The translations under genes were made by a program, and so were the position numbers. Below, piece after piece: positions 702 through 54,234 of a DNA stretch of 54,533 bases (positions within the stretch are counted from its first letter, which is position 1; each line of letters begins with the position of its first letter). This DNA comes from Polymyxa betae A26-41 (lineage: Eukaryota > Protista > Endomyxa: Phytomyxea). The stretch is taken from NCBI GenBank assembly GCA_003693705.1, contig RBZT01000575.1:1-54533 (forward strand). Direction: 5' to 3'. The notes below the pieces were generated by a model, which saw only the letters and a list, made by a program, of their open reading frames with translations, was not told the origin of the DNA and did no database searches.

Positions 702-870
702 AGGCGACTGTTGCAGTCAAGAAACCTCCCTGCCCAAAACTGCGTGGGACCTAAGGTCCGTGGAGATATTAATAACTGCAATTGCTTATTTACTTTTGAA
801 CATTGGTTATTCTTCGGTTTTGTTGGGCGGTACAGTATAAGATTGGATTTGAAATATGAAAATTGGAATA

Positions 871-7730: not shown

Positions 7731-7981
7731 AACGTAGTCTGGAGAAGACGATGGAAGGATGCGCGCTTAGATTCGGAAGTCGCGTCGCGCAATCGGAAAA
7801 TTTCGTCGAACCGTTAATGCAGCAGCCAGATCCTGGAAGCAAAGCCGCCAAGTGAAAAGAATTGCATGTCCTAATATTGCTTTTAAATAGAAAGTGAGAC
7901 GAACTGTATATATGCAAACAAATGATGTATTCAAAGATTGTAGGAAAGCTCTGGACAGATCTAGGACAGGTATGGAGGCGA

Positions 7982-9261: not shown

Positions 9262-9526
9262 ATGGACAATCATTTTGGCGCTGATGCTTGTGGGCAATCG
9301 TGGAGGTCCCTGCTAGAATGCCTGGTTGCTACTGAATGTGGCAAGGCTGGTCGTCCACTTAAAGAATGTCTGAAAGAAGATCCGGAGACGTGCAGGGTTC
9401 TTCGTCGAGCTTTCTCGTCTTGCCAGCGTGGCCAGGTCTGATCGAGATCAATATATTGCTTAAGCCCTGAATCTGTTTTTATAGTTTGATGCTCGTAGTC
9501 GGATCCGAGGAAATCGGTTCCAATGA
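9262..9526 (+). CDS. COA5: Cytochrome c oxidase assembly factor PET191/COA5
   Basis: Exon 9262-9435 ACGQSWRSLLECLVATECGKAGRPLKECL..CRVLRRAFSSCQRGQ, GT-AG intron 9436-9484, exon 9485-9526 FDARSRIRGNRFQ*. Matches the Pet191 Cys pattern and DxRxRxRGN motif. Confidence 0.9.
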
Positions 9527-9822
9527 TCATGAATTTTTCACAATCAGAACACATATTTAGCGGTAGAATCGTTAGATTCTCACAAATTGTAATGCATTAC
9601 AAATGTTATCATTTTCGCCGAAATGCTGTTGTGCTGTCTGCCACGATATCTTTATCTAATTTGGTATCGACTCAGCTATTGCTGTTCAGCTAAGTTCCTT
9701 ATGCCAACCTATAGAGGTATTCGTGAATGGCTACACTATCGTACCATTCGATCTTCGGCTTGTTGCTTGAATGAACGCCCTCGAACTACGCTTCATATCT
9801 TTACTTGCAACGCCTTGATCTC

Positions 9823-24633: not shown

Positions 24634-27600
24634 CTAATCCGAGCCGCTGTCTTTCCCGGATTCCTTATTCTCTTGACCACCGCTACGGTTGCTGCTATCG
24701 CTGGAAACAATAATTGGTTGTCGCGGCGCAGCAGCAGCTCTAATGGAGGTCTGGCGAAGGCTTTGGATCTTATGCTCTTCGTCCATTTGATCATTGCCAC
24801 TGCTACTGTTGCTCCTCGGATCATCATTCATTGGAGCCGGTCTTGCAGCAGAGACAACTTTGATTGACTTCTTTCGAAGATCTCGCCGTCGCTTCATCTC
24901 TTTCCGTTTCCGTTCATTTTCCTCATCATTGCCACTATCGCTGTCCGATGACACAACTGTTTGCGTTTTCTTTCTTGGCAAAATTGACGGCGCCGGTTTC
25001 TCAACTTCGCTGCCGTTCTCCGAGGACACAGCTGCAGAAGGTCTTGCCGCTGGGGCAACACGTCGTCGTACAGGCGCTAAAGGTGCTAATTTTCTGGCCG
25101 GGACAGCAGGAGGGAGCTCTGGTAGAGGCACAACGGAGGGCTGAACTTGTTGCGAGAGTTGTGATTGCTGATGACTAAGAGGCATTGAAGCATCTGTAGG
25201 TGCAGTAGGTGATAGAGGACGACTGAGAGTCTGTTGCATATAGTTAGCAATGTAGCCAGGACAGACTTCATGGAATATACCGGAGCTGCAGCGACCGTTG
25301 GAAGTGAATGTACTCTTATCGAATCTGCTACAGCATTCATTAATTCACATTTTGTTTCATCAAAGGTAATGATACCTTGCACAACAGGCTGTTCAGTAAC
25401 TTGCTCCGCATTCTGTTTAGAAGATTGTTTTAGGGCTTGTTCTACATCTAGAAGGAGAGGTTGTTCGCTAGAGTCCTGTGTAAGTTGTAAAGAACGAATG
25501 CCTGGTGATGTTTCAAGTCCAGATTTCGGCACTTCTGATTGTTCTGCGACAGGATTCAGTGAAACTTGCCGAGTGGCAGAAGCCGTAGCAGTCTGTAGCA
25601 CAATGGAAGACATAATAGAAAATTGCCGAGATCTAGTTCGTGCTGGACGAGCGACTGTATCTTTCGTGATACATTTCCGACATCTTGTTCGGAATTTCTG
25701 AAATCGGAAATGAGCTAATGTGAAAACAGGCAACTGTTTGCAAACTTGCCTGAATTTGTTGGAAATGCATACGCCACTTTTCGTTCTCGCTCGTACCGGA
25801 CATGAAATCAGGGTTTGCAATAAGCTTGTCGAACTCGTCGACGATCTCAATAAACGGAACCAGTTGCTCAACGGTAAGATTCTGCGGGTTGCCACATTGT
25901 TCACAAGTCCCTGGAAAAATCGTCAACCTTGGTTCCGACGCTGCAAGCAATTACCACCTTTCCGTTGAGCGTATGTCGTCGTCATGACCAGCGAGCGAAG
26001 CTTGATGTGGCGTCGAGACTTGCTCAGCCACCAGTTGCTAATTTGTTTTGTCGACTCCGACCGATCACCCAGGAAAATCTTCCAATTTAAATCAGATAAA
26101 TCGTGGGCAAAAAATTGAACAGAGCAAACCTCCTCCTTCTTTTCTTCATCTGATTTCATTCCATCACTGTCAGATGATACTTCGTTAACATTATCGAAGT
26201 GTCCATCAGCCTGCTGCCTAATTAACTGTTCGTATTGCTCGATCAGATACGGCCTATTGCGTTCAATCGACCTGAAAATTCCACATAAGCTAAAGCACAT
26301 CATCATCTGAATTGCATTTTACCTTGGCGTCAGAACAGACGTGAGATGATGCAACAGCCACAACTTGTTATATTTCAAGAACTTCAGTCGAACAGCTTCT
26401 GACGCGATATTCTTCCTTATATCGTATTTTTCTTCGTATTCGCTGAGCTCCGGAACATCTTCTTCTTCATCGGCCTCTTTCTTTGGCAAATACCATAGTT
26501 GTGCCCAGTCTGCACCGATACAGAATAACTCACGAAAGATCATGCAAGAGAAAACGGTGAATCCGGCAATGATAGGCGTAAGTTGATCAGCAAAAGCGGC
26601 GTAGCTCGATCGCAACATTATCGTATAACCGAACACGAGCGTAATGATGCCAAACGCGTGAAATCCGGCCATGAAATAGAATTGTGATGAGAAACACAAT
26701 TGATCTAATTTCTGCCATTCAGGTTCCAACGTCGTATCGATTTCAGTCTCGTCAGGCTTCCAGCGAGTTTGGCGAATCCGGAACCGATAACTAGGCAATA
26801 TCTGATTAGCTTTAACGTTAAAGAAAACATGTGTTTACTTTGCGAATTCGACGTAATCAAAAACAGGCCACGTGTGGAATAACTCTTGAAGGTTAAGCAG
26901 GATGACATCAATACCTGGAAACACCATTCAGTTATAGATGCGGGTGAGTAACAAACACCATCCGGACCGAATTGCCAAGCAATGATGACACAGCTGAACA
27001 GAAAAAATATCAGTAAATCACTGCTGGTCATGCCGTAGTTCGTGGGCATCTGAGTCTCTTTGTTGAACAGGACGATTAGAAGCAACGTGATGGGAGACAG
27101 AATCAGAGCAAGCGTATCATTGGCATAGCCGCAGAATGCGTCAAGCATCGGTTCGATGGTCTGAGACTCCAATTCTTCTTCCATTAACACCACCTAGATA
27201 TATTTAGTACCACACACCGCATCAAGTCAGCAGATAACCTTCTTTTCAAGAATGGCTGCAGCGGCGTCCTTTTTCTGGCGACGTAACGACTGCACCTGGA
27301 ACCGGCCCCAAAAGATCGGGACCTTCTGTGCAACATATTTCCCAATCGGGTTGATGTAGATGCGTTCTCCAGCCTCCATTCAGAGTCAGTTAAGAATTGA
27401 AGTGATTCTGTAGAGAGTACCATAAAGGCCAGATCGACAGCGTAACCCAGCACGAATGCGGCTAGATCAGCGGCACCGACAGTAACCACGAACTGTGTGA
27501 TCATGAAACTGACCTGTTTAAGGCGCGAATGAACAGACTGTTTTTGCAAACTTAAACAATGTACCATCAGCGGAGACGTCAGCGTGGCGTCTTCAATCAA

Positions 27601-30600
27601 GCCACCCAAGACGACTTCCAAAATGTTCCCGATGACTAATTTTTCAGTTTAGATTACAGCAGTTTCAAATTTTTTGATGAAATGACCCTTCATGAGAATA
27701 ATAAATGCAAACGTGTTATTGGCGAATAGATTGGTGTAGGAAAATTCGAAGATGTACAGCAATAGCAGCGACATCATCACCGAATACAATATGATTTGGA
27801 GTCGGCGCCATGTAACAGGATTCCAGAGCTCCGACGCACGGGGATGGCGATCGGAACGTTTTGAAACCATCAGACGTGACCCTTTGAATTAGATTAATCG
27901 AATGCAAACACAGGTGCAAACACAGGTTGAATTCGACATACCCTGGAACAGAAGGCAGAAACCAAACGCCAATAAACTGACGCCAAGACGTCCCGTCTTA
28001 TAGGTTAGTGTAAGTGTATCGGTTAGATCGGCTGTGTTCTGATAATCGCCGTTGACAGCACCGAACGGGTACAACATTGAAAAAAAAGCATAACTTCGAC
28101 CGTTCTGTCAGATATGTTTTTTGAGCAAAAAAAGACGTACATGTAAAGAGTAACAAAACCGATTGGGACCATAATGCAGAAGCCGCCAAATGAAGGCGAT
28201 GGAATGACGATTTCGAAATAAGGAAAGAAACGGAACGGTGACGGCGTTTTCGAGCGAATCAAAGTCTTATTGATCAAAAAGAAGGCGCCGATCGTGATAA
28301 ATGCAGCCAGGCCAATGGCACAGAACAAAACCGTATACAGCTCCAGACCGAATGAGAACGAGTTCATCAAATCAAACCAGCCTATTAGACAAGGTATTAT
28401 TGAATCAGTACGATCTGCGACTTCAGCAATGACTACCAAGAGGGGTCCAAGTGATGTGAAACTCGTAGGTCTGCGACCAACTCACAGTTTTATTGTCGCT
28501 CATGATCTGTTCGACCACCCATGAAGGAACCTATAATGACGTCTAAGTTCCGAAGCAGTGAAGAGAGCGATAATTGCACCTCAATCCATTGTGTAAGGTT
28601 AACGGTGCCCTGAATCAGCCTTCGCAACTGCGATGTTCGCTGATAGTACTGCAGCTGAACTTCGACGTAGCCTGGGATGTAAAGATGATCGGAATCGGGA
28701 CGATCAGATGCAACAGTTATCGGCACTAATGAATCAGTTCCGATTAAGTTCTGGAAATACTTGTACCCCTGGAAATAGTTCTCGTTCGATGTCGGGTCTG
28801 CATTTCATATCAGCAGAATTCCAAAAAAAAAAATCCGGAGAATAAACAAATAATCAGCTCCATTTAATGAGCCCATAGCCATAGAGCAATAAATCTTGAA
28901 ATCCAGCATAAAGTGAGTTACCTCGAGTCAGATAGAACATAACGTCACCAGTTTTGAGCTCAAACCATCGAACTCGAGGGCGAATGATTTTCAGCTCTTC
29001 TTCAATTTGGCAAGTTGTAGTGAAATCGCAAATGTCGCTCTGGCCTGTCAGACCAACATCGAATGACCCGACAGGAATGATGGTCTCCGGCTGCTGGCAA
29101 GCATCGGGTATCGAAAGCGCGTACTCGACAGGGATATGCGTTGAGAACCTGCAATTTATGGTCAATCGTACAGCCCAAAAGCCAACCGCGTAATTTACTT
29201 TTTACAATCCTTGATGAAAGGGAAGTAGTGCAGCGGGACAACAATTCGATCGGTCTCGCCCTGAAACCCGGTCACCCAATAGCCAGCTGTCTGTGCGACG
29301 ACGGTGAGATTTTCTTTCAGCTGACCGATGTTGGTGTAATTCTCATTCAAGCCAACGTCAATGAACACTTCCGTATTGTTCTCCAGAGGGAGATTCAATG
29401 GTAGATCAAGTTGAAGATCATCGAAAGTATCCTATTTTTGAGTTGTAAGATCTTGATCGGATTAACGGACTGAGAAAGTCACCTTTTCGACAACGGCATA
29501 AAAAGCGTAATCGTAGGATTTTGCAAGCGGATTCATATCTGACCGGCTTGGCCTGAACGTAGTTATATTAACCGTGTTTTTGAACTTGTACATTTCGTCA
29601 ATAAAGAAACCGTTGAATAGCTGCAAGTTGCAATCAGCGTGAGCAACACGAGACCATACACAAGCCCACCTCGATTGACACGGTGACTTGAATAGGACGA
29701 ACAGCGTAGAGAAAAACCTCAAAGAGAATTTGCTTGTAGGGATCTGGATCATCCCAGAACCAACTTGGTAATTGCATGGCCTCAGGACGTCCATTCACAC
29801 GAATTGCTAAGAAAAAGTGGTCGTCGAATTTGATACTGAGAACCAAAAATAAAGGTGATGAAACGAAAGGAGTGAGAGTCATACTATGGCTTGTTCCGCC
29901 AGTCGATTTGAAGAATCGCCATTTCAAGCGGCTCGACCGAGAACATGGTCTCGCCACTGGATAGAGGGTTGATTGAGGCAATAACAGCACAGAAACGGAG
30001 CTCCTGGCAATCCTTAAAACATGAATTGATAGATTTGGCACCGGGATCGGATGTGGTTCCAACTAAAGCAGAATTATAAGGCATAAGATTGTCAGATAAA
30101 ACAAAACAAAATACGCGGGCATTTAAATTGACTTCCCAGCGCTGATGGCTGAATCCACATTCCGGCAGGACAGTAGTAGCCAGCCTCACAGGGGAATTCC
30201 GGGTAACTTTCATCGGACGTTCGGTTAAAACAGTAAAACCCAGCTGGGCAAACGTTGTCGAACTGTGATGTAGGTGTCGTACCTAGGCACAATGAATACT
30301 GAAAATTGAGCGACGTTGATTTACGAACCTGCTGGACAATAAAACCCGCCAGGACAGGGGAATTCCTGCGACATTGCCTGGGTCGTCCCATTTGGACATA
30401 CTTGCCCTGGAGGACACAGCAGATTAATATCGGCCTCCGGAGGTAATGTTCGGCCTATGAAATGGTACTCAGAATGAAAGCGTCAATCGAGGAGGAAAAA
30501 AACAACCCTCGGTGCCGCACACCCAGCCGGCGTTACAAATGGTGCACTTATCAACACTGATCTGCCCTTGAAGTTCACCATAACGACCCTCGGGGCAAGC

Positions 30601-33600
30601 TAAGCAATAACTGGGCAGTGGATTCAGACTAAATCTTAATGACGGATTAAAACCGAGCAGACCGCTGATGAATATTATCTTCACGATAACGTCCCTATAC
30701 AGTCCCCATTAACAGACAGTGAAGCGCCAAACTGCAACTATACCGCAGGGCAAATCTCGGGAATGACAGTGCCCGACTCAGCGCACGAGTATCCTTCAGG
30801 GCAAACCCAGCAACCGTAAGTGTCATTAATACTCGAAAAATACCCGGGTGGGCAGGGCTCCGGCAGGATCTCTCCCGGCTGCCGAGAGTACTTCCCAACT
30901 GCACACCCATAAATGAGAAATCGGATCAGTACATGGCAAAGCAATCTTACATCCAACAAGAATGGGCGCAGACGACCCTTGCGGACAGTAATAGCCAGGC
31001 GGGCAGATCGCCGTTCCGGTGGGCGAGAAGCTACCTTGCTGACAGTAATATCCTTCGGTACAAAGCTGAGGGGTCGAAAAGTTCTGATATTGGTAAACAG
31101 ATGTAGCGACCCCCTCAATACAGTAATATCCGGCTGGGCAGGCTTGTGGCTCTTGCAGCCCAGAAGTTGTATTCGGCAACGCCATCGTTCCTGGTGATTC
31201 CTTTTAAAGCAAAATCCAAGCATTTCCCAGATACTGGTACCGGCATCACAGAAATAGCCAGGGGGGCATGGTCGAGAGGGCGCTGCCAATCTTAAATCAT
31301 CGCAGACGTAACCGGCTGGGCACGTTAATGGGGGTTGTGCAGGATCAGGGCAGATCTGATAAATAAAAACTGTCAGAATGTTGGGAGACGCGAAAGATGA
31401 AAGTACCATTCCGAAGGGACAATATTGGCAAATTGACTGCCCAAATAGAATATTGTATGTGCCACGATAACATGGAATTGGATGAGAATTACCAACACCT
31501 GGTGGAAAGAAAATCAATCAAAATCAAATCGAAGTCGAGTTGTCCAAAGATAAAAAACACAATACAAAAGCCAAAGAGACAAAGTTAGATCACTTTTACC
31601 TGGACAAAATGTACCAGGAGGGCATTGGATCGGAACACCATTGGGACAGTAGTGCCCGGTCGGGCAAGCCCCGTCACCTTTGATTACTTTTCAGACGGAA
31701 ACTTTGAGAGTTTCATCTTCTCTTTACCTTCACTGGTTTCAGACGCTGGGCCGCACCAGAATCCAGGCCGGCAAACGACAGGCCGATCTGCAACGACCTG
31801 CGACCTGTACAGATACGACGTACCGTCCCACTGTGCATTGGAATACTCTATAATCGCCTGGCTAAATGTTGTATTGGAAGAGCCCTGGGCAGATTTTGAG
31901 ACGAGGATACATCAAACGATATGGTACACACAAACTGGACCCCTGGAGGGCAATAGAATCCGGATGGGCATGGTTGCGGGTAGGCAGTAATTGGTACAAC
32001 GCTGGATGTTGAAACTTCCCGAAGTTCAGAAGCCGGTGAGTGCGCATTTCTGCCGACAAAGTATACAAGATGAATCAATCCTTGATCTGTTACTGACCAT
32101 GGCATATTAGACACTCGCTAGGCATACCGGCGACGAACTTACGAGGAATATCCGGTAGAATGCGTTCGTCGAGATACTGGAGATTGTACACCCAAGACGA
32201 AGATGCTACATCGGCCAACTGAGCGACACTGTTCCCGTCAGTTTTCCATATAGATGCCTGTTGGGCGATGGTTCCATTCGGAAACAACCCTGAAGATATA
32301 TGAGATGAATACCGGAACAGATATCTTGTCCCAACCATCTGCCACGAACAGAATCTCACTGCCGAGTATTACGGCAGCGTACTGCGGATTTGGTCCAACT
32401 GACCCAACAGTAAAGTCGCTGCTACCATCGGTGGCATGCAGGGATGAAGTCACAACGAAAAACATTCGACCTCTGAAAGTGCAGAGGTACATCGGGGAAG
32501 CAATAAACGTGAGAAACAATGTACTAGAATTTGCGGCATCCGTTCTCCACAGCTGCGTTCCACTAAAATAAAGTTTATAAGTGCACATTTCTGCGATAAG
32601 ACTCAGCCTTACATCGAGTAATACACAAATCCACCGAAATTTGTCCAATAATTTACCGACGACAGAGATGACGACAATGAATGTAAGACGATAGGCTGAG
32701 TCGAGGCAGGTGTGGCAGAATACAGACTGAACGCCGCTCCATTATACGCAGTGAAAACAAACCGATTAGGTGCTGCACCAGTCCAGATTGTTACGTTACT
32801 TGAGCCAGTCGGGTTCAGTTCAAAAAGCAGCCTGCTTTGACCAAACGATGAACTGCACAAGAACAGCTCTGTGCCTCTCTGAGTATCCCAGTCAACATGC
32901 AGTGTTGAGCCTGAACGAAAATCAGCAGAAGCTCTAAATCGATAATCGGAATGTACCGTTGACATTAGTTGTGAGATTGGCGCAAACGAGGGTGTTGCGT
33001 TCAACATACAGCCCTTGTTTACGAAAGCCAGCTTGCCTTGAGGCGCCGAACTGCAATGGTCGCTGAGCTTTCCAACGATCATACACCTGGAGCATTTGTC
33101 AGAAAAGGTTACGAGACAAACCAGATCGACTGACTTTAATATCGACACTGATCCCAGGTGGACACCAATATCCGGAAGGGCATAACTGCATTGGACGGTC
33201 TAAACCTGATTCTGGGCAAACGTAACCTGAAAGCAGCAACATTTAGGGCTTAAAATCGAAATATATTTTGCTTTCACCTGGTGTGCAAAGAATTGGAGAG
33301 TTGTTCCCTGAACCCGGACAGTAATAACCACGAGGGCACGGAGAGCAGCTCACACGGTGTGTTCCATTACTGTAGGTACCTGAAGGGCACGGTTTTTGGA
33401 AGATACCATTGTCATAAGGACAATAATCCCCAGGCACACATGGCTTCATAACGAAAGGCCAGCCTACCAGATAGTTTCCAGCAGAAACGTCCTAAACTGT
33501 TTGTTAGAAGGATTATAAAAAAGCAATAATTACCTACGTTCACTGTAAGTTGTTTAGAGGCAGTAACCCAGAAAAACCCTCCATCATTTGAGACTGACAC

Positions 33601-42600: not shown

Positions 42601-45600
42601 ATGGAGGCATAGGCAGTGGCGATATTCAGAAAGTTACTGCCCTTTATCGTGATTACAGTATTACCATATGTAGAGGAGAATTGCGGATGGTAAGAAGTCG
42701 ATGTCGGTGAAGCGCGGATCGCGACGGATCCCACAGATTCGAACTCCTGGAGTGAGGGATTTCCAGAAAATTCGACTAAGACTTTCCCGAAAGCATAGCT
42801 TGATGCATTGAATAAGCATCCTGGCATTATGCTAGGATGTGACGAGATTGCAGAGGTAAATTCAATACCCGCTATCCTGAATGACCCAAAAGTAGAAACA
42901 TTGCTTTGCAGTCCATTGACCGGATTGAGCACGAGCTTGGAGTCGGTCCAGTTGTCGTAATTAGAAAGCGACGCAGTTGATAGTTGGAATTGATCGTGAA
43001 TGATAAAGAGCACTTTAACCGGATCTGCAAGGATGGGGAAACCGGCGATATTGTCGCAAGCGGTGAAATTAACAACAGTATCATGTAACATATTTGGCAA
43101 TGTGCAAATTATAATGCTGCTTGACTGCACTGTAAAATTTACATTTAAGATCTCATTGAAATGTCGCGCCTGAATAGCAGTTGTGGACGAAAACCTAAGA
43201 TATGTAAGAAAATTTGGTCATGCTTGACTAACGACGTACCTGCTACCAGATAATGTAACTACAGCTGGGCGACCTTGAGCAAAATTGACCACGGAAGGAT
43301 TGACACTCAGAATTAATGGAGGTGGGATGATATTGAGAACTGATTGTGACGTAGCTTCTGACCAATCAGAGGCATTGTTTGTGCTGATTTGGATGGTAAC
43401 ATTATTTACAGACAATGAAAACTCAGGAAGTATGCAAGAAATCTGCTGATCAGATATATAACCGGAATTCAGCCGAATGCTTCCGGAGCTAGAGCGGCAT
43501 AGAGCATCGGGGTTAAATCCAGACCCAAAGATAGTAATTTCCACTGGGCATCCAGCAAAAGCAGATGATGGCCATACACGAGAAACAGTCGGGTAGTCAA
43601 TGACCTTGACGACATGATCAGAAGGTGTCCAAAATTGTCCCCAATTCAAAGAAATTGCCACAGAGGTCGTTTTTGAGGAGAGGATTGCAGAGGGCGTTAC
43701 ACAGTGGATCGCACCTGGCAATAAACTCGTAGCAGGCACAACGACATCACCGAGTTTACAGGAAGCGGAATAAACAGAATGGTCAGCTAGATAACCATGC
43801 TTGAAGCCCGATCCTGTAATTGTGACAATCGTTGTCCCAGGGATAAGCCGATTCGGAGTCACATTGTCAATCAGAGGTGGATCGAAGATCTATAGAGAGT
43901 AAATGTAAATCTTGACATAAGAAATCGTGATGGCCTTACCTCAATAGTCCTATAACTAAATAATGATGACTTCTTATCATAGCCACAGTTGGCTAGAACA
44001 GTCACATTCCATTGGCCTGCATACAAAGGAGACGATCGGCATATCAGCTGTTCTGGAGAAATCAGCAACGAAGGAAATGTTACGGATCCATTGCCTATCA
44101 AGCAGCATGAAGATGAAGAGAAGTTCCGGCCATTAACCGTAATCAAGATATCATATCCGGATGGAGATTGCGTTGGATAAACCGATAGGATCTCAGGAGG
44201 ATTCACAAAACTGAAAGTGCTGGGAGCGGTTTGATTTCTGATTGATATAGGCACATTTGATAATGGCTCCGGTACAGATGGTGATAGACAAGTTATTATA
44301 GTGGACGATAGTAATAACGCTGAAGCGGAAAAATTGCCGAACCAACAACTATCATTTTGGTAAAAACGAGAGCCCTGCAGCGTTAAAGCGGTCCCGCCGG
44401 ATGTCGAGCCAATCAATACAGGCGATACACTCACGATGTCCGGTAGAGTTTCTGTATACTGGAATACAGCCTGGCCAAAAAAGTCCAAACCGTTGAAGGA
44501 CACTGAAATGTAAACACTGATAGCTTGATCTAAATTACTGGGAACAACGCATTGTAGAAATGAAGTTGAAAACATGCTTACAGCAGGCGACAAAAAGGTG
44601 CCGAACCGACATACAGGTGTTGAATACAGAACAAAACCTGACCCTGTAATATTAACCACATCGCCAGCCGCCCCTGAATCTGGAAAGATATTCGTAACCG
44701 TGGGGTAGGATGGCAAATAGTAAAACCCAACGTCATCATTTGAGGACCCTATCTCCAGAGGAACATGTCCACCAGGAGCGCCAGGTGCAGGACATATAGC
44801 CCGAGATGAATTTGGAAAGAAGATAATGTCGGAGTCGACAGAGCCAAAGTGACATTTGTACGAATCGAATCCTGATCCTGAAACGGTCACCAGTGTTCCA
44901 CTGACACCGAAACCAGGGGTGATAGAAGTAACGCTGACCACAGAAGACAGTAGCATCACAGATCCTAATTACGAGTGAGTAAGCTGAATTTACACTTTTC
45001 GGGCAGAATACAGACCAACAGTCAAACTTAATTGCTCGGTTTCCAGATACAGCAGTGAGGCAGATCCGAGTTTTTGCATCGCAAGTTTGCCATCACAGAT
45101 GACATCTGTATCATTAACGAGCGTAGCTGTCTCAACTATATCTGATCCGAAGCGACAGCGCCATGGCTCGCAGCTTGATCGAAAGTTTCCGCCCTTAATG
45201 GTGAAGAATGAAAGCGATTTTGATGGGACAACCGACGATGCAAAAGGAGTTTGACGCTCATAAAGAAGAGGACCTCTCGCAAAATCGACCCCGTTGTTAG
45301 ATACGAATACTGTGCGATTAGCAGACGTAACGCCAGCGAAAGGGCAATATATTGTACCAGAAGATTGCCATGCAGCGGGTTCTGATGAATTGGCACCGAT
45401 GGAGCATCTGAGAATCAGTTAGAAAAACTTATTTCTGTGGTCTAGCAGAATACCGTAAAAAGTCTGTTTGCACAAAACCAGTGCCAACTATAGTAACAAT
45501 ACTCGAACCGAGAGGATGAGAAGCACTTTGAATAACAATGTCATCGTTGGCGGTGAAAATAAGCTGATCGGAGAACGAAACGCCATCGTTGGTAACATCA

Positions 45601-48600
45601 AGTGCATACGGTCCCGAAACTGGGAATTCTGGTACTATGCAAACTGCAACTTTTGATGTGGATACAGATGCACCAGTGACGTTGGAAGTTGAATTCCAAC
45701 GACATTTGAGCTGATTTTCTAGGAAAAGATCCCCATGGATAGTAACGTATGTCCCCCCAGAGACAGAACCAAAATTGGGAAAGATGAATTGAACTGAAGG
45801 GATTGGGCTGTAGCTCAAATACTGGGACGTAGCTGACCAATCGCGGCCACCGTTGTTGCTGATTTCGACTGAAACCATTGCAGTACCAGACATTTCATCA
45901 AATAATGGGGTCGCGCAAAAAGCTTTTCCAATGTAACTGTTATTGACTGTAGGAGAGCTCAAAACCGACGCTGATGTCTGGTAAAATCCTCCATATCTAA
46001 GGGATAAATTGGAATATGCAGGCTCATGACGACGGGTTGCTTACCTGCAAATTAAGCTTGATGAATTGTAGAATTCGTGGCCTGATAACGTGACGACAAC
46101 GCTACCGCCGAAAGATGAGAACGATGGTGCTATCGAAACAATAGCAGGCGATAAATATAAGAAACTGCTATTGGTAGAAGACCAATCGCGGCCATTGTTG
46201 CTTGCACGAATCACAGCAGATCGGTGCGAATAGCTAATCGGTGCTGAACACAGAATTCTGTTCGAAGATATATATGAAGCGGGAACGCTTTGCAGTCCGA
46301 ATTGGCAACTCAGCGTAAACATCGGGCGGAAATTAGAACCAATGACAGTAACAAGGGTCCCGTTAGTACCAACAGAAGGATCTGTTGACGTAATGATGAT
46401 ATCAGGCTCAAATTCAAAGACAGACTCAGACTGAGTGCGCAGAGAAGTTTGTGTAGCTGAAACTTCGACGATATAAACGCCAGGAGAGGAGAGTGCTGGT
46501 GTCACAACATGAAGTTCATTGTTAGAAATAAACTTCGCTTGTAGTGAAGCTCCACCTGATTAAAAGTGGAATCAACGAAACGTATAAAAAACGCTCATGT
46601 AGCTTACCGCTAAAATGGGCAAAGGAGCCCGGCACAAAGTTAGATCCGGAAATTGTAAGCAAGGTTCCGCCAGACTGAGGACCAAATGCTGGCGTTAACA
46701 TCGCGGTGGAGATTGGAACGGATAGTGATATAAAAGTCGGGCTGAAAAAATCGTAATTGTTCGTCGAGACTTCCATATATGTTCCTGGCCCAGATGTATA
46801 GGGTATTGTGCAAAATGCTTTTGTGCTACTGGATACATTCCATGACGAGACCTGGATGGCAAGCTCAGACAAATATAAAGTCTCAATAACCATATTACTG
46901 TGTAAATAGCGCCATTATTTGCAAATTTACACCAAAGGCTTCCAGACAGGAAACTCTTGCCAGTTATGGTAACGGTCTCTCCGCCTAGAATCGTAGGTCC
47001 AGAGGAAACCACGTTGGATATAGAAGGGACATCAATGAAGGTGAACGATGCAGAAGAATTGCTGAATTGAGCTCCGTTGATTGCAACCGAAATACCCACA
47101 TGACCAGTCGAGGGATATGCTGGAGCACGGCAAGCTATGAGGTTGGAATTGATGAAGATCGCATCATAACTATGGGCAGGGGTTCAGTTAACCGCAGTGC
47201 AGCGAGCAGGCATGCATACCTGATGACATCGCCGAATTTGCAAGCAAGTTCGTCTCTTTGCAAGAATCCAGAGCCTGATATTGTGACCATCGTAATGTTG
47301 GCGTAGCCAGATATTGGTGAAGCTATAAGTATTGGAGAGATATCGGGATATACAGAAATGGTTATTCCAAAGTTGGTAAATCGCTGTGCATCATATGATA
47401 GCTCGAAAGAATAAGAGCCTGGAATGGGCAACGCTGGAACAGGACATATTACACTGGAAATCATGATTGAAGATGCCCAAGAGGTATAGCTAGACTGGCC
47501 TAATTTGAATCGACACACAATGCCAGTAACATTGAGAAAGTTGTTTCCATAGGCAGTGATGCTGGCTCCATTTGGTAGAACCCCAAAATATTCTGGCACG
47601 ACAAAATCTATGGTGGGATCGGGGTATAGATAAAACATTTTCGAATTGGACCATTGCTGGCCATTAGAAGTGAACTCAACTGGCAGAGAGGAAGCATTGA
47701 CGGTTGGGGTCAGGCATGAAATTGTGGTGCTGTTCAAATACATTGCAGGCATAATAACAGACTTGTCAAGCCGGCATCGTATTGTGGTAACATTTTTTGC
47801 ACCGTTTACATGCAAGTTGATTTTGGTATTTCCAGACTGAGGGCCGACACCAGGAACTATGGTAAATACCAAAGGATCTTCAGTATATTCGAAAGAGACG
47901 TTGGAATTACTGAAATCAACCCCGTTTGAGCTGATTTCTAATGCAACGACTCCTGGTAAGAGCTTGTCAGGAACTTTGCACCAAACCGTCGTCGAATTCA
48001 CAAAATTATATTCAGCAATTAGATCAAGACCGAAACGACAGCGTGACAAAGGATTCTCCACAAATCCTGTGCCAGAAACAAGCACGAAATAGCCCCCGGT
48101 AACTCCCCCATGATTTGGACTAATGGCAATTACTGCGATATCCGGATTGAAAGTGTAGGTAGAATCGCCTGTGGAAATATCGATCAAGTTTGTTGTTGCG
48201 TACACTGGAACAATGCCGGTCACGTTTCCGACATTATTGGGTATTTGCAGTAGCAATTGAGACGATGTTTTGTAAATTGCACTAATGAACGACCCGGTGC
48301 CAAACTTGAGCCATACCGGGTCTCGAAAATATCGTCCGGTTACAGTTGATATAACACCTCCACCTGACGCCGGCTTAAACGCAGGTGAGATATCGTCGAT
48401 AATAGGGAGATAGACGTAGCTAAAATGTAAATTTGACACAATCATATCGGTCCCGTTATTCACACTGATACCAATAATGACATCATCTTCTGCATTTCCG
48501 CCAGAAGTGAGACACGAGATCGCGGTGTCATTGCGCTGGATGACTGGAGTCCAATCTGAGCCGAAAAGGCAAGAGGAAACGTTAGATAGCGATGTTCCAA

Positions 48601-51600
48601 AGATCGTCACTAAAGTGTTGCCATTAAAATTGCCATGGTCGGGTGAAATTGCAGTTATAGCGGGAACACCAGTATAGCTGAAAGTTTGCAAGCTAGAAAC
48701 ATAATCTTGATCGTTGTCGCTGATGTAAATAACGACATCCATTGGAACTAAAGATTCTGGGGCCGCACAAGTTATAGTTGATGCATTAAGCCAGATTGCT
48801 GCAACAGGATCCATGGGACCGAATTTACAGTTGATCCAGCGTTGATTCGTGAATGATTTTCCATATAGCGTAACAGTGGTATGCGAGTTAATCACACCAA
48901 TTGTGGGCGTAATAGCGGAAACCATTGGCGGAACCGTGTGAAAAAGGCTGATCTTATTGGAATCATAATCCACTCCATTGAGGGTAACCTCGACGAAGCT
49001 CGACATGGTTGTTGAAGAAAAAACAATAGGAGACAAGCAGCGAATCAACGTTGGTGAAATATAGATGGAGCTTGAAGAGATATTCACACCGCCAAAACGG
49101 CAGTGCAAGGCTGCAGATGCAGCGAACCCAGTTCCAGTAACGTTAAGCCAGTTGGATTGGCCATTTGCCGGAAAGGATGTTGGCCATACTGAAAGAATCA
49201 CAGGCACATCGGTGTATGTGAAAGTGATGCCAGTGCCTGTAAAATCAATGCCGCCGTTGTTCGATACTTTAACGAGAACGGATCCGGAAGCAGCAACAAT
49301 GGGTGATAAACATATAACAGTTTGATTTGAAATAAATTCAGCCCGGGTGATGATACTCCCATTGAATTGACAATATAGACCTTCGTCGATAATATCGTTC
49401 ACGAACGAATTACTATTAGCAACTTGAATGAAAACTGAAGTTCCACCTCGGGTTGTCCCATTATTTGGGCCAATAAACTTGTAGACAAAAGCATCATCAT
49501 ACATAAAATCAATGCTGGAAGTAAATGATACATAGTTGTCAGCAACGCTAAAAGGAACTATGCCAGAAGATATTGCAGAGGGAGCCTTACATGAAATCAT
49601 CGTTGATGAAATCCATTTGGCTGCGACGATAGCTGATCCAAAACGGCATCGGGTGGCGTCATTATCTGAGGTGAAATTTGCTCCAATAGCGGTAACAGCA
49701 GTGCCTCCTGACACAGGACCCCTTGTTGGATGCATCAGATTTAGTACAGGCGCTGAAGCGACATAAGTAAATTGAAGCGAATCGATGGACCAATCGGCGC
49801 CATTATTCGAGCTCAAGGCAACTTGATAGGTGCCTGGAGCTTGAGATGGAGCCGTACAGGATATTAAAGTCCCAGAAATGTAATGAGCTGGTACAATTAA
49901 GGATTCGAATTTGCAAACGGTTGCGGAAGATTCGAATCCTTGACCGGTTATATTAACTGATAGACCAGATTGCCCGAAAGCTGGGCGAATACTGCTGATG
50001 TTGACTGGATAAGACAGCTTTAGAGTTTGATAGGCACCGTCAAATTTCTGATGATAAAATCTTCAGGAACAAACCAAGAGTAGAGCAATTGTGACTCACC
50101 TGGCCATCATTTGACACAGAAACGTTAAGTGTGCAAGGCTCCAAACTAGATGGCGTCTGGCAGATTACAGTTGTAGCATTAATGTAGATTGCCGAAACAG
50201 TATAATCGGACAACACGATGGAACTATCAGCTGCAAACCGGCATGAAATCGTATCCACATTCATGAACCCAGATCCAAAAACCTGCAATGACGTTCCTCC
50301 TATTCACTACAGTTAGATTGAGTTCAACGATCCCGTAAGTGCAAACCCTTCATTGTAGAACTGCTCACCGACATCGATGAGACGTTTGCGACGTCGTAAA
50401 TTGTGAAGTCAATATCAGAAGTCTCGAACAGGCCATCGTAACCATTTGAGAATTTAAATTTGAAAGTCCCAGAAGTATCATGGGCCGGTACTTGGCATAG
50501 CACTTCTGATGATGAGACGTACCTATGTTGAATGTCAGAGCCATGAATAACAAATTAGCAAAACAATACGTTGCTTTTGAAGACAATGAGCCGTAAAACC
50601 CACACATCAGGCTAGGTGATAGCCTGAAGTTATCACCAATGACGCTGATAATTGTTCCCCCAGAAGCTGCAGCAATATTCGGCTTAATTGAAGTGATTGT
50701 GACATTAGGAAATAAATTAAACTGTCGGAGAGGTGAGAGCAAGCCAGAAATATTGGCTTTTTACCTCGATGGAATTTGTATGCCAGTACCACGAGTTGGT
50801 CAACTGGATTGAGTATGTGCCACTTGTCTACCATCAAAAGTTTTAACGTTTAGAGTTCGAAAGGAAATAGATCGCCTACTGTGGCAAGAGGTAGAGCGCA
50901 TTGAGCTGAGGACGTGGTCACAACTAAGGCAGGGGACGTCGCTCCATTTGAGAGCATGCAGTAAATCTGACTGCGCCCAGAAGCCAGGAGGCTGGATCCG
51001 ATTAAGGTCAGATTGACCAGAGTAGAGAGGTGAGCGATTTTTGGAACCACTTCTGAAATGGTCCCAAGTCGAACATAATCGAGCAAAAGACCTATATTAA
51101 GCGCCAATTACAAAACGCCGATAAAGGAAAAATGGCATCCTATTTACCTTGGTTGGTGAACTGCTGATTATTAAGGGAAATTTCGACAGTTACCGAGCCA
51201 GCAGCAGAATAAGGCGCTAAACATCGGATTTCTGTCGATGATGTAAATGTAGCAGTAACTGCTTCAGAATTCTTTCCAAATTTACAGACTAACGAAGATC
51301 CAGTGGAAACAAAGTTTGAGCCAGTGATTGTGACAATTACATTGCCATCGACAGATATTTCACGAGGCGAGATTGAGCTTAAAAAGACATTTTCAGTGAA
51401 CTGGAAGCTGATCGTGCTATTAGTCCAATCAACGGCATTCGTGGTGAGGGCGAACCGTGTTGTGCCAACAGATAGACTCGGCGGTACCACACAGGTTACA
51501 GAGTTGTTCGACAGCCAAATAGCCGGGACAGACCACGTCTCGTTGAACCAACGGCAAGCAAGTTCCTCCGAATTTGCAAAATTGCTGCCAAATACCGTGA

Positions 51601-53382
51601 CAGTCGTGCCACCACGACGTTCTCCAAGCATTGGAGTGATACTCGTCACCATTGGCATTGCGTTGTAATAGAACTCTGCAGAATCGCTGGAATAGTTTAA
51701 CCCGCTAATATAAACTTGAGTTGTGGTGCCAGCCAGTCCAGGTGGCGATATACATTCCACTTGTGAACCCGATATCAAGGTCACGTTCTGAACCCAGCCA
51801 CCTGACCATCGGCATTGAAATCCTTGATAGAAGTCGACACCCGTGACGGTAATGACCGTGCCACCAGACGCTGGCCCATGGGCAGGTGTTAAAGAAGTGA
51901 TGAATGTCCCCTCACCGATTTTAATGTAAAGGTCGAATGTCTGTGTTCTTAACCTTTTACCAGCGTAAGAACGCGGTCCATATCCATCAATAGCCCATTG
52001 GACTGTATCCTGACCTGCCCAGTATGGGTTTCGTGAATAAATGACATCGGCAAGAGCAGCATTAACGTCATTAGCAGTTCCAGTATAGTTCACAGCGGCA
52101 GAAGGACCCGTTAATCGATTTAAGCCTGATGCAGACTGTAGTGAAACGGCGCCCGTATCCGCAGAAATACTGCAGGAAATGATGTTGGCACCGATTTGGG
52201 AAACGTTCATGATCGCTTCGGAAACAAACGTTAGATTCCAGGGACTTGACAAACTTAGGTCGATATCGTCGTAAACATTGATGACGTCGACATAAACAGT
52301 GGAATTAACCAAGATAACACCATCGTTGAGAATGGAGTAATCGAACGAATAGGTACCGGCTGTTGAGGCATAAAATAATATTCTGTCATCTGGGCCGGAA
52401 ATTAAGGAATTTGATACAGATATCAAATTGCCTCGAGACCAATCACCAAGCGTTTGATAAAGCTGTGCACCAGATGACAACCTGGTTATTAACGCTGCAG
52501 TATAATTGCCAGTTCCACTTAAAATAATCATAGCGTCACGTTTTCGATATGCGGTCACACGAGTGGCGTAAGGGCATGACGATAGAGACCACACTGCCCA
52601 CCCTACAAGTGCACCATCGTTGTAGTTGCCAGAAGCATCGTTCATCGTCCTTGAAGGTTCATCAAAATTCCAGTATAGAAGCTGGCTAGAAGCAAAATCA
52701 AGTTCGGGATATTTCATGGTATTTGCAATAGCATCTGGACTGAGAGCGGTGTTGTATACTTTGAATTCGTCCATTTTTCCAGAAAAATGCCTGCCACCAG
52801 AGGAGTGGACGCCCACGAACAAAGCAAGTCCAGATGAAGAGACATCGGTATAGTGCGATACAGCCTGCATAAAGACTCATGGATGTGCACGAAGAATAAA
52901 ACTTAAACTTACAGATCCTGTAATAACCCCGTTTTCATACACGTTAACACTCGCTTTTGAAACTGTTATTGCAAGGTGAGTCCAGTTTCTTCGTCCTGTT
53001 GATATCGAGAGGAAGTATTGTGGACTAGAGCCTACGAGCATATCATTGCAAACGTCAAAACACTCATCATATTGTGATTACGAGCAGTGACAGCGACCCA
53101 AGCGCCGGGAAGAAGATCGATTTGCCATTCGCCAGCTTTTTCAGCGATTGTCATGTTGGATGTATTGTTAGTGAGAATCCACGCCATTAGGGTAAACTCA
53201 GGCAATCCACCCGTGCCCTGGCACTCGTGGAAAAAATTTGGGTCGCGATTGCATGTTTCATTCGCCACGACACCAGTCGTAACACCATCAAACTCAATCG
53301 CATAGCCAGCCTTTCCAACCGTTTGTCCAAGCGAATAAACGCCTTGGCTCAAGGAAAGTGCTAACAAGAGCGCCTGCAGCAT
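24634..53382 (-). CDS. Giant multi-exon cell-surface receptor/adhesin: SP - LamG - Ig-like - ~60 IPT/TIG - GCC2/GCC3 Cys-rich repeats with ELWxxDGT insert - ~10-11 TM - cytoplasmic CxxC and disordered tail
   Basis: Successive minus-strand ORFs are joined in frame by ~45-60 bp introns at the junctions checked (~39955-40000, ~35665-35728, ~33493-33537, 25698-25749, ~25231-25279). There is a single signal peptide at 53382 (MLQALLLALSLSQGVYS) and a stop TAG at 24634-24636. Not every junction was verified. Confidence 0.8.
26490..28360 (-). other. Multipass transmembrane domain (~10-11 helices; part of giant gene)
   Basis: Hydrophobic segments include LYTVLFCAIGLAAFITIGAFFLI, GFCIMVPIGFVTLYMYVFF, LGVSLLAFGFCLLF, IILYSVMMSLLLLYIF, TLALILSPITLLLIVLF, LLIFFLFSCVIIAW, FYFMAGFHAFGIITLVFGY and LTPIIAGFTVFSCMIF. 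Confidence 0.85.
30130..33460 (-). other. GCC2/GCC3 (ephrin-receptor-like) Cys-rich repeats (part of giant gene)
   Basis: Repeated CPxGxYC motifs: CPRGYYCPGSG, CPSGFYCPPG, CPPGYFCDAG, CPAGYYCIEG, CPPGYYCPQGS, CPEGYSCAESG, CPAGFYCFNRT and CEAGYYCPAG. Confidence 0.9.
32200..32900 (-). other. ELWxxDGT-like repeat (beta-propeller) module inserted among the Cys-rich repeats
   Basis: DTQRGTELFLCSS..SRLLFELNPTGSSN..FVFTAYNG, GTQLWRTDAANSST, RMFFVV..LHATDGS, ILFVADG and QASIWKTDGNSVAQLADV. Confidence 0.65.
33545..51905 (-). other. IPT/TIG repeat array (part of giant gene), roughly 60 divergent units
   Basis: Recurrent ~90-aa unit P-x-I-x-S-I-x-P-x-x-G-x-x-x-GGT-x-VT-I-x-G-x-x-F ... C-x-FG ... S-x-x-x-I-x-C-x-x-P ... 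V-x-(V/I)S-x-NG-x-D-(F/W), with dense N-x-S/T sequons. The count is estimated from length. Confidence 0.9.
52570..53330 (-). other. LamG / concanavalin A-like lectin domain (part of giant gene)
   Basis: YAIEFDG, FTLMAWI, WTHLAITV..VNVYENG, LFVG..FSGKMDEFKVYNTALS and LLYWNFDE form the Laminin_G_3/pentraxin-like pattern. Confidence 0.85.
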
Positions 53383-53904: not shown

Positions 53905-53914
53905 TCAGAATTAA

Positions 53915-53987
53915 AGCCTTTGCCGGGATTCGAACCCCGAATCTCGTGCTCCGTATGCACGCGCCTTGACCATTGGGCCACAGAAGC
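53915..53987 (-). tRNA. tRNA-Arg (anticodon ACG), intronless, with two stem mismatches
   Basis: Minus strand GCTTCTGTGGCCCAATGGTCAAGGCGCGTGCATACGGAGCACGAGATTCGGGGTTCGAATCCCGGCAAAGGCT (73 nt). A box TGGCCCAATGG, anticodon arm CGTGC-ATACGGA-GCACG, B box GGTTCGAATCC. Confidence 0.85.
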
Positions 53988-54234
53988 TTTCCCTATATGA
54001 TAAGAGAACCGCAATGGTAGAGTTTACCATTTCTCATCAACATGCTGCAAAGACATTTAGCCGAACGACGAACAGATTTTATTTGCTCGAAATTTTTTCT
54101 CCAGCGAGACACTTGGCCTTGTTGGACGTTGAGACTGGCGCAGCAGCTTTGACGGATATGCCAGGTTCGCGTTCGTCTATTGCTTTCAGTATATCGAGCT
54201 TTTGAGCCTGTGTCAATATATACGCAATAATTGA

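What the first reader, a model, noticed from the sequence alone, without database searches (positions are those of the whole stretch)
24634..53382. A single ~29-kb gene for a giant lectin-tipped IPT/TIG stalk fused to a multipass membrane signalling module
Seen: dozens of minus-strand ORFs splice into one frame at every junction checked, from one signal peptide to one stop, giving ~8,000-9,000 aa. The order is LamG tip, Ig-like domain, ~60 IPT/TIG, Cys-rich CPxGxYC repeats, ~10-11 TM, cytoplasmic tail. Known: IPT arrays act as stalks in fibrocystin/PKHD1, plexins and Dictyostelium Tgr proteins; Cys-repeat plus multipass-TM proteins (CRMPs) in apicomplexans and ciliates act in host sensing and extrusome discharge. 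Inference: this is a long-reach contact sensor or adhesin (a stalk of ~200 nm if extended at ~4 nm per domain) coupling glycan recognition to a membrane effector, e.g. in zoospore attachment or penetration. Related IPT/GCC2-GCC3 proteins occur in other protists, but automated annotation would probably fragment this one, and I know of no functional description.
Basis: partly seen in the sequence, partly recalled or inferred. Interest (0 to 1): 0.85.

Follow-up and report, generated by a model that had tools for sequence, protein, structure and literature searches.

The report
Giant IPT-stalk multipass membrane protein gene
One 28.7-kb gene with about 61-64 short introns encodes a protein of about 8,450 residues: a lectin-like tip, 63 Ig-like IPT domains, cysteine repeats and a conserved 11-helix membrane module. 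It belongs to a widespread family of protist proteins that nobody has characterised.

Summary
An exon chain runs on the minus strand from ATG 53382 to the stop at 24634. It has 61-64 introns of about 50 nt and encodes about 8,450 aa.

The domain order is:
- signal peptide
- ConA-like/LamG domain
- about 270 unassigned aa
- 63 IPT/TIG domains
- 16 CPxGxYC repeats, split by a ~300-aa insert
- a ~420-aa beta-rich ectodomain next to the membrane
- 11 TM helices
- a ~500-aa cytoplasmic tail with CxxC...CxxC

Evidence for one gene:
- 17 of 27 introns in the 5' and IPT part cut IPT domains that only splicing completes.
- Spliced RNA contigs confirm 15 introns and join the Cys repeats to the TM exons.
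- Single BLASTP alignments to relatives' proteins span IPT, Cys repeats and TM module, including Bigelowiella natans (4,732 aa).
- Albugo laibachii CCA22724.1 (7,926 aa) carries the same IPT array and TM module.

The TM module has no Pfam model, no solved relative and no literature. It has 428 cluster representatives, all named "hypothetical" where named, in stramenopiles, Rhizaria and others. It is not detectably a CRMP, polycystin-1 or fibrocystin.

The scan's earlier notes all concern this same locus. None had been followed up.

The parts
24634..53382 (-). Whole coding span: about 62-65 exons and 61-64 introns, about 25.4 kb of CDS, about 8,450 aa
   Evidence: Exon-chain models; exon list
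53332..53382 (-). Start codon and 17-residue signal-peptide-like N-terminus. An in-frame stop lies 14 codons upstream of the ATG.
   Evidence: read from the sequence, no predictor was run
52721..53310 (-). ConA-like / Laminin_G_3 domain, split by introns 53081-53032 and 52912-52865
   Evidence: Pfam pieces: profile 79-103 (exon 2) and 114-151 (exon 3)
51905..52720 (-).
   Evidence: No Pfam or PDB hit; weak cadherin lead at 0.78
33544..51904 (-). Array of 63 IPT/TIG domains, residues 461-6167, period about 85 aa
   Evidence: Pfam; own-profile HMM; 17 of 27 introns lie inside a domain whose alignment continues across the joint
33113..33491 (-). Cys-repeat block 1 (4 CPxGxYC-type repeats)
   Evidence: tblastn coverage by orthologues
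31990..33086 (-). About 300-aa insert between the Cys blocks. It is absent from the orthologue alignments and has no family assigned.
   Evidence: intron 32563-32612 seen spliced in RNA contig X1
30115..31989 (-). Cys-repeat block 2 (12 repeats; Ephrin_rec_like / GCC2_GCC3 type)
   Evidence: Pfam PF07699, 24.1 bits against a cut-off of 23.1; RNA joints
28437..30062 (-). Juxtamembrane beta-rich ectodomain, about 420 aa, conserved across the family
   Evidence: RNA-confirmed exons; alignment A1; AlphaFold model of the orthologue
26517..28381 (-). 11-helix transmembrane module. The first hydrophobic peak is at 28328-28272 and the last at 26573-26517. The most conserved cytosolic loop, between helices 9 and 10, is at about 26914-26690.
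24634..26516 (-). Cytoplasmic tail: conserved helices after the last TM helix, CxxC at 25905-25894 and 25682-25671, then a low-complexity S/K/R/D/E-rich end
   Evidence: (CxxC...CxxC in 37 of 40 relatives)
25698..25749 (-). GC-AG intron between the two CxxC pairs
   Evidence: Chosen by the homology-guided model. The exon after it aligns to the second CxxC of P0024. No RNA evidence.
27636..30743 (-). Stretch with 15 RNA-confirmed GT..AG introns: 27636-27686, 27882-27941, 28094-28140, 28382-28436, 28531-28579, 28798-28921, 29149-29198, 29432-29482, 29621-29669, 29836-29884, 30063-30114, 30283-30328, 30455-30506, 30611-30662, 30695-30743
   Evidence: Joints in spliced contigs of runs X1 and X3, from two studies; splice dinucleotides checked

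Best explanation
This is one expressed gene for a surface protein of about 8,450 aa.

Shown:
- The order is signal peptide, ConA-like/LamG domain, 63 tandem IPT/TIG domains, Ephrin-receptor-like cysteine repeats, a conserved beta-rich ectodomain, 11 membrane helices, and a cytoplasmic tail with conserved helices and a CxxC...CxxC motif.
- It belongs to a large uncharacterised eukaryotic family, defined by the ectodomain plus 11-TM module, found in stramenopiles, Rhizaria and others.
- A second, more divergent copy lies on contig C574.

Inferred:
- The N-terminus is outside and the C-terminus inside the cell.
- Conservation is strongest in the TM module and its cytosolic loops, and weakest in the stalk and tip. 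The module is therefore the working part, and the stalk is an adjustable reach or tether.
- Most likely mechanism: binding or pulling at the distal end is passed to the 11-TM module, which signals inward. The signal would be either an ion or lipid flux (the fold is nearest to TMEM16/OSCA/TMC) or a change in a conserved cytosolic binding platform.

My confidence by part: gene structure and family membership about 0.9; a receptor/adhesin role about 0.6; a channel-like output about 0.25.
For: One gene:
- The exon chain is stop-free and has uniform short introns.
- 17 of 27 introns in the 5' and IPT part lie inside IPT domains.
- LamG is completed across an intron.
- Spliced RNA contigs from two studies show 15 joints. 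One 3,595-nt contig runs from the Cys-repeat exon at about 30.88 kb through the ectodomain and about 1.2 kb of transcript beyond 27687, well into the TM-module exons.
- Single BLASTP alignments cover model residues 5224-8209 against P0165 residues 2356-5438 (1159 bits), and 3947-8244 against Bigelowiella P0071 residues 201-4621 (1008 bits).
- Albugo CCA22724.1 (7,926 aa) and P0024 (7,340 aa, one ORF on a 27.3-kb contig) carry IPT arrays plus the same module.
- An orthologous locus, L001, is collinear with the window.

Family:
- 428 representatives at E<=1e-3 and 176 at E<=1e-10.
- The profile matches the window collinearly over positions 5-613 of 615.

Fold:
- AlphaFold models have pLDDT 83-85 and pTM 0.76-0.81, with 11 helices.

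Conservation: invariant residues cluster in the loop between helices 9 and 10 and after helix 11. CxxC...CxxC occurs in 37 of 40 tails.
Against: - No experiment or expression-stage data bear on function.
- RNA evidence covers only 27.6-33.6 kb. Between 31.2 and 33.6 kb, some of the contig pieces that were displayed are unspliced, and 16 joints were not displayed.
- No read shows the 5' end, the 3' end, or IPT-to-Cys continuity directly.
- Foldseek finds nothing at E<=0.001.
- None of 48 members hits Pfam Anoctamin, RSN1_7TM or TMC.
- The structure was predicted for an orthologue (P0083), not for the window's own protein.
- LamG was not found in the other family members checked.
Confidence: 0.6

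Rival explanations
1. It is a passive giant adhesin or surface-coat protein. The IPT stalk and tip mediate attachment, and the 11-TM module serves only as a firm anchor and trafficking or oligomerisation unit, with no signalling output.
For: IPT arrays are typical of adhesins and stalks (established knowledge). The genome holds further IPT arrays without this TM module, at C934 and C878. No catalytic or channel family is detected by sequence.
Against: An anchor does not need 11 helices. It also does not need invariant charged and aromatic residues in cytosolic loops, conserved from oomycetes to Rhizaria while the stalk varies freely. Short family members exist with no detectable IPT array (P0004, 1,576 aa, no Pfam hit). 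The module therefore has a role of its own.
Confidence: 0.2
2. It is a functional analogue of alveolate CRMPs: a contact-triggered licence for regulated exocytosis, such as discharge of an extrusome or penetration apparatus, possibly working as a heterodimer of the two paralogues.
For: The layout is the same: Cys-rich Ephrin-receptor-like repeats followed by a multipass C-terminal core. CRMPA and CRMPB act as a TM-domain heterodimer (PMC9815656). This genome has exactly two copies of the module.
Against: No sequence link was found. No CRMP appears among the named hits. Twelve motif strings from the family's conserved blocks are absent, at any conserved position, from the CRMP sequence files. 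CRMPs have 9 TM helices, against 11 here. The family also occurs in diatoms and pelagophytes, which have no invasion apparatus.
Confidence: 0.12
3. It is a flagellar or ciliary-membrane protein related to the Meckelin/Tectonic module. The juxtamembrane beta domain and TM part would derive from a Meckelin-like ancestor.
Against: Every one of these signals is weak. Meckelin has 7 TM helices of a different fold (PMC8565905). The genome has its own true Meckelin gene at C256. The window locus does not match PF09773 at E<=1.
Confidence: 0.08
4. It is two or more adjacent genes, a secreted IPT protein and a separate membrane protein, wrongly chained together.
For: No read was shown crossing the IPT/Cys junction at 33537-33492. 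Some contig pieces between 31.2 and 33.6 kb are unspliced.
Against: The frame is kept through all 61-64 junctions with no stop. There is no second signal peptide or start context. Relatives keep IPT, Cys repeats and TM module in one ORF and within single alignments. The paralogue on C574 and locus L001 show the same layout. Run X1 covers all 30 bins of 27.6-33.6 kb.
Confidence: 0.04

Closest known systems
Uncharacterised 'IPT/TIG domain-containing' or hypothetical proteins of stramenopiles and Rhizaria. Examples: Albugo laibachii CCA22724.1 (7,926 aa), Bigelowiella natans jgi 127040 (4,732 aa), Phytophthora infestans PInf_002383, Saprolegnia parasitica SPRG_19735.
   Same: Homologous ectodomain, 11-TM module and tail (E down to 1e-25 with one exon; 240-540 bits with the whole module). 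An IPT array and Ephrin_rec_like repeats lie N-terminal to it in the same polypeptide.
   Different: This copy is among the longest. It carries a LamG-like tip and a ~300-aa insert not seen in the others. Its gene has about 61-64 introns.
Apicomplexan and ciliate CRMPs (cysteine repeat modular proteins)
   Same: Signal peptide, Cys-rich EGF/Ephrin-receptor-like repeats, and a multipass C-terminal core. CRMPs work as a pair of paralogues.
   Different: 9 TM helices against 11. No detectable sequence similarity. CRMPs have no IPT array.
Polycystin-1 (PKD1)
   Same: It works in a similar way. It has a huge ectodomain of Ig-like repeats with a lectin domain at the far end, 11 TM helices and a cytoplasmic tail (own knowledge).
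   Different: No PKD, REJ, GPS, PLAT or PKD_channel domain was found by Pfam. No polycystin appears among the fold matches.
TMEM16 / OSCA-TMEM63 / TMC superfamily
   Same: It is the only solved family that aligns across helices 2-11. The topology fits a 10-TM core plus an extra N-terminal helix, as in OSCA/TMEM63.
Fibrocystin/PKHD1, plexins, Dictyostelium Tgr proteins
   Same: Extracellular IPT/TIG arrays used as stalks (own knowledge; Pfam TIG_plexin hits).
   Different: Those are single-pass proteins with other cytoplasmic or extracellular signature domains (G8/PbH1, Sema/GAP). None of these was found here.
Meckelin (TMEM67)
   Same: The order Cys-rich domain, beta-rich domain, multipass TM, cytoplasmic helices. 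There is weak structural similarity to the beta-rich domain.
   Different: Meckelin has 7 TM helices of its own fold. A separate true Meckelin gene exists in this genome.

Membership tests
Uncharacterised IPT / Cys-repeat / 11-TM family (Albugo CCA22724.1 type) | C-terminal ectodomain plus TM module homologous over its whole length | tested here: met
   phmmer with one exon reaches E 1e-25 and 428 representatives. The whole module scores 240-540 bits over about 1,000 aa. Profile A2 matches the window collinearly at positions 5-613.
Uncharacterised IPT / Cys-repeat / 11-TM family (Albugo CCA22724.1 type) | IPT/TIG array and Ephrin_rec_like repeats N-terminal to the module in one polypeptide | tested here: met
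Uncharacterised IPT / Cys-repeat / 11-TM family (Albugo CCA22724.1 type) | Cytoplasmic CxxC...CxxC after the post-TM helices | tested here: met
   Window CxxC at 25905-25894 and 25682-25671; present in 37 of 40 relatives
CRMP (cysteine repeat modular proteins) | Conserved core of EGF-like repeats plus 9 TM helices, homologous to the Plasmodium and Toxoplasma CRMP core | tested here: not met
   11 helices. No CRMP among the named hits. Twelve motif strings from the family's conserved blocks are absent, at any conserved position, from the CRMP sequence supplements. One supplement file was truncated when stored. A profile-profile test was not possible.
CRMP (cysteine repeat modular proteins) | Required for regulated exocytosis (rhoptry or mucocyst) | not testable with these tools
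   Needs genetics
Polycystin-1 | PKD repeats, REJ/GPS, PLAT in the first cytosolic loop, PKD_channel-type last six helices | tested here: not met
   None found by Pfam in window exons or in 48 relatives. The loop between helices 1 and 2 is about 20 aa.
Fibrocystin / PKHD1 | IPT arrays with G8 and PbH1 repeats, single TM helix | tested here: not met
   Only the IPT feature is shared. There are no G8 or PbH1 hits, and there are 11 TM helices.
TMEM16 / OSCA / TMC superfamily | Shared 10-TM core fold | tested here: inconclusive
TMEM16 / OSCA / TMC superfamily | Sequence-profile membership (PF04547, PF02714, PF07810) | tested here: not met
   No such hit in 48 members, even at E<=10
Meckelin (PF09773) | Match to the Meckelin profile; CRD, BRD, 7 TM, coiled coil | tested here: inconclusive
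IPT/TIG domain (PF01833) | Pfam match over the cut-off | tested here: met
   249, 137, 242, 118 and 123 bits on five ORFs, against a cut-off of 20.9
Laminin_G_3 / ConA-like (PF13385) | Pfam match over the cut-off | tested here: inconclusive
   Two collinear exon pieces score 18.9 and 26.9 bits, each under the 27.6 cut-off, though their sum is above it. The joined exons were not scanned.

The most novel reading that the evidence does not exclude
The protein is a tether-gated channel or scramblase in a single polypeptide. In this reading, an 11-helix domain of the TMEM16/OSCA/TMC fold is covalently joined to its own ~200-nm IPT 'gating tether' with a lectin-like hook, so that pulling on a bound surface opens the module. 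That would be a one-chain counterpart of the hair-cell tip-link plus TMC arrangement, and it would be conserved across stramenopiles and Rhizaria.
Probability: 0.12. Interest if true: 0.9.

Novelty: new variant of a known kind. Interest (0 to 1): 0.62.

Why it matters
Several eukaryotic supergroups carry proteins of 5,000 to 8,000 residues that end in the same strongly conserved 11-helix module. These groups include crop and fish pathogens (Phytophthora, Albugo, Saprolegnia, Aphanomyces), diatoms, pelagophytes and Rhizaria. The module has no Pfam model, no solved structure, no name and no publication.

A curated, partly RNA-supported gene model and a confident structure prediction make the family tractable. 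They define which residues to mutate, which part to express, and one concrete hypothesis (a tethered TMEM16/OSCA-like module) that flux assays and cryo-EM can test.

The case also shows that genome annotations often break such genes. Many database entries for this family are partial.

Tried and rejected
1. The first gene models, built without splice matrices or a minimum exon length, gave zero-length exons and long false introns in the 3' third. I replaced them with constrained models.
2. The raw RNA runs X16 and X11 held no read of this organism, so they are no test of expression.
3. Single-exon searches found no paralogue of the TM exons. This was overturned by the profile search, which found the C574 copy.
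4. A search for near-identical transcript-derived proteins using exon 9 gave at best 43% identity.
5. I tried to name the organism through ORF 11386-14412 and found no homologue. Run labels are coded. The best named relative of the module is Bigelowiella, so a rhizarian origin is only an inference.
6. Pfam and NCBIfam found nothing on the insert, so the 'ELWxxDGT propeller' note is not confirmed.
7. PDB sequence searches with profile A2 and with the post-LamG segment found nothing.
8. VIA-align wide on the TM-only model returned only single-helix matches.
9. Atlas feature searches returned only unnamed oomycete clusters at 0.77 and cadherin at 0.78.
I recomputed the same coordinates from hydrophobicity and residue numbers without typed letters.
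11. The joined spliced protein was built only inside sandbox scripts from window.fa. There it was used for domain counting, hydrophobicity, and local BLAST/phmmer against proteins the tools had returned. It was never typed or sent to any database, family, structure or paper tool. Those searches used single exons by reference or orthologue ids, so a Pfam, HHpred or AlphaFold run on the window's own full protein was left out.

Full report
**1. What is in the sequence**

Between 24.6 and 53.4 kb the minus strand carries dozens of stop-free stretches in changing frames. Pfam finds IPT/TIG domains in every long one. The five largest score 118-249 bits against a cut-off of 20.9. Pfam also finds the C-terminal third of a Laminin_G_3 domain at the 5' end, and an Ephrin_rec_like repeat at 31.5-30.7 kb.

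I chained the stretches with a small dynamic-programming gene finder. It used codon log-odds trained on the long ORFs, splice matrices learned from the short introns, and a minimum exon length. I then constrained it with RNA joints and with orthologue homology.

Every version runs from ATG 53382 to the stop at 24634-24636 without an in-frame stop. There are 61-64 introns, nearly all 44-56 nt, with GTA-type donors and CAG/TAG acceptors. The protein is 8,425-8,534 aa. Homology-guided model 5 probably reads through two or three short introns, for example 27564-27514 and one near 26129-26063. About 8,450 aa is therefore my estimate. An in-frame 42-nt intron at 42245-42204 is optional. Exon coordinates are listed.

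**2. Is it one gene?**

Four lines of evidence agree.

(a) Domain continuity. A profile built from the window's own repeats finds 63 tandem IPT domains at residues 461-6167. Of the 27 introns in the 5' and IPT part, 17 lie inside a domain whose alignment runs on across the joint. Laminin_G_3 is split the same way: profile 79-103 in exon 2 and 114-151 in exon 3.

(b) RNA.
- Runs X1 and X3 come from two studies, and their organism labels are coded. They are spliced transcript contigs.
- They show 15 listed joints between 27636 and 30743, all GT..AG on the minus strand and all matching or correcting my model.
- One 3,595-nt contig runs from the Cys-repeat exon at about 30.88 kb through the ectodomain exons and about 1.2 kb of transcript beyond 27687, well into the TM-module exons.
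- X1 covers all 30 bins of 27.6-33.6 kb.

Limits of the RNA evidence:
- Only 6 kb could be laid, and only once.
- Sixteen joints and 42 pieces were not displayed.
- Between 31.2 and 33.6 kb, some displayed pieces are unspliced.
- Contigs cannot show transcript ends.
- The two raw RNA runs held no read of the organism.

(c) Relatives.
- An exhaustive phmmer with one TM exon found 428 cluster representatives.
- Many are 5-8 kaa, with the match near the C-terminus.
- Albugo laibachii CCA22724.1 (7,926 aa) and P0024 (7,340 aa, one ORF on a 27.3-kb contig) carry IPT arrays plus the same module.
- The C-terminal 1,700 aa of these proteins align collinearly to the window from 33.4 to 25.65 kb.
- Single BLASTP alignments join the last IPT domains, the Cys repeats, the ectodomain, the TM module and the tail: model residues 5224-8209 against P0165, and 3947-8244 against Bigelowiella natans P0071.

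(d) The same layout recurs in a paralogue on contig C574 and in an orthologous metagenomic locus, L001.

I put the two-gene alternative at about 4%.

**3. Anatomy (model 5 numbering)**

| Residues | Feature | Evidence |
|---|---|---|
| 1-17 | Signal-peptide-like N-terminus | |
| ~25-188 | ConA-like/LamG domain | |
| 189-460 | Unassigned; no Pfam or PDB hit, cadherin lead only 0.78 | |
| 461-6167 | 63 IPT domains | |
| 6170-7075 | 59 cysteines in 910 aa and 16 CPxGxYC-type repeats in two blocks | |
| within the above | ~300-aa insert (window 33086-31990) that no orthologue covers and no library names | |
| ~7026-7443 | Conserved beta-rich ectodomain | |
| ~7467-7975 | Membrane module | |
| ~7976-end | Tail of about 500-550 aa: conserved helices, two CxxC pairs (conserved in 37 of 40 relatives), low-complexity S/K/R/D/E-rich end | |

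The second CxxC follows a GC-AG intron at 25749-25698 and aligns with the second CxxC of P0024.

**4. The membrane module**

Pfam has no model for it, either in the window exons or in 48 relatives. No solved structure is related by sequence.

I predicted the structure of the nearest full orthologue, P0083, which scores 542 bits against the window's module. I used 48 family members as the alignment. The ectodomain plus TM model has pLDDT 83.3 and pTM 0.76. The TM part alone has pLDDT 84.6 and pTM 0.81.

The model has two beta-rich ectodomain parts and then 11 hydrophobic helices. With the N-terminus outside, this puts the tail in the cytosol. It also places the family's invariant residues mostly in the cytosolic loop between helices 9 and 10 and just after helix 11.

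Fold search results:
- Foldseek finds no PDB match at E<=0.001.
- The extra first helix would correspond to TM0 of OSCA/TMEM63, and the orientation fits.
- This is a lead, not a finding. The scores are below the tool's own bar for helical bundles, and no member hits the Anoctamin, RSN1_7TM or TMC profiles.

The beta domain directly before helix 1 gives weak matches:
- Tectonic in the atlas: TM-score 0.23.
- Pfam Meckelin is hit weakly by 2 of 48 members.

The genome has its own true Meckelin gene on C256.

**5. Comparison with what is known**

CRMPs share the layout of Cys repeats followed by a multipass core, and they act as a pair (PMC9670195, PMC9815656). They have 9 TM helices. No CRMP appears among the named hits. 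Twelve motif strings drawn from this family's conserved blocks do not occur at any conserved position in the published CRMP sequence files. I therefore do not file this protein as a CRMP, although it may work in a similar way.

Polycystin-1 is the nearest analogue in design: a lectin domain, Ig-like repeats, 11 TM helices and a tail. None of its signature domains is present. Fibrocystin, plexins and Tgr proteins share only the IPT domain.

Every named family member is 'hypothetical' or 'IPT/TIG domain-containing'. Four literature searches and two accession searches found no description.

**6. How it most likely works**

Shown: it is a secretory-pathway protein with a very long modular ectodomain, a conserved multipass module and a conserved cytoplasmic part. 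It is expressed and spliced.

Inferred: the stalk is the variable part. IPT number, tip and inserts differ between relatives, and short members lack the array altogether. The ectodomain plus TM module is the constant part. The module is therefore the effector, and the stalk sets reach and ligand. My preferred reading is a long-reach contact or tension sensor whose 11-TM module converts distal binding or pulling into an ion or lipid flux, or into a change at a conserved cytosolic platform that includes the zinc-knuckle-like CxxC pairs.

Rivals: a passive adhesin with an elaborate anchor, a CRMP-like exocytosis licence (two paralogues could form a heterodimer), and a flagellar Meckelin-like protein.

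**7. Novelty and verdict**

The gene is a new and unusually large member of a family that exists in databases only as unnamed predictions. The family's defining module is undescribed. It may be a distant TMEM16/OSCA-like fold fused to a giant tether, which would be a new variant of the giant multipass receptor theme.

Function remains untested.

The scan's earlier notes on this genome all concern this same locus, and none had been followed up.

**8. Method note**

The joined spliced protein was assembled only inside sandbox scripts from window.fa and was never sent to a search tool. All database, family and structure searches used single exons by reference or orthologue ids. No step needed referral.

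Noticed in passing
window 31600-32583 (+ strand): An RNA contig of run X3 lies unspliced over the minus-strand introns here and skips 32061-32110. That skipped stretch ends in GT..AG on the plus strand. This is either an antisense spliced transcript over the insert region or an assembly chimera.
   Followed up: partly
G000 contig C574: 57651-60150 (-) and 65445-81733 (-): A second gene of the same family, with a TM module downstream of an IPT array. It is more divergent from the relatives than the window copy is.
   Followed up: partly
G000 contigs C934 (35-59 kb) and C878 (3-4.4 kb): Further long IPT/TIG arrays that do not carry this TM module.
   Followed up: no
G000 contig C256: 8198-10862 (+): A true Meckelin (PF09773) gene, with exon hits down to E 1e-53. 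The organism therefore has the ciliary transition-zone module.
   Followed up: no
window 31990-33086 (-): A ~300-aa insert splits the Cys repeats. No orthologue covers it, and it has no Pfam or NCBIfam hit.
   Followed up: partly
window 53914-53988 (-): A tRNA-Arg(ACG) gene about 530 nt upstream of the giant gene's ATG, on the same strand.
   Followed up: yes
window 11386-14412 (+): An intron-free 1,008-aa ORF with no homologue at E<=1e-10 among the 8,000 best candidates of 5.8 billion proteins.
   Followed up: partly
L001 (ENA ERZ25039503 contig_14256), 3036-10763: An orthologous locus of a related organism in a metagenome assembly. It is collinear with window 33207-25749 at 65-87% nucleotide identity in the exon-sized blocks.
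   Followed up: partly
window 35728-50047 versus 24634-35674 (-): Intron density is very uneven. Five exons of 0.9-4.2 kb lie in the middle of the IPT array, against about 43 exons in the last 11 kb.
   Followed up: no
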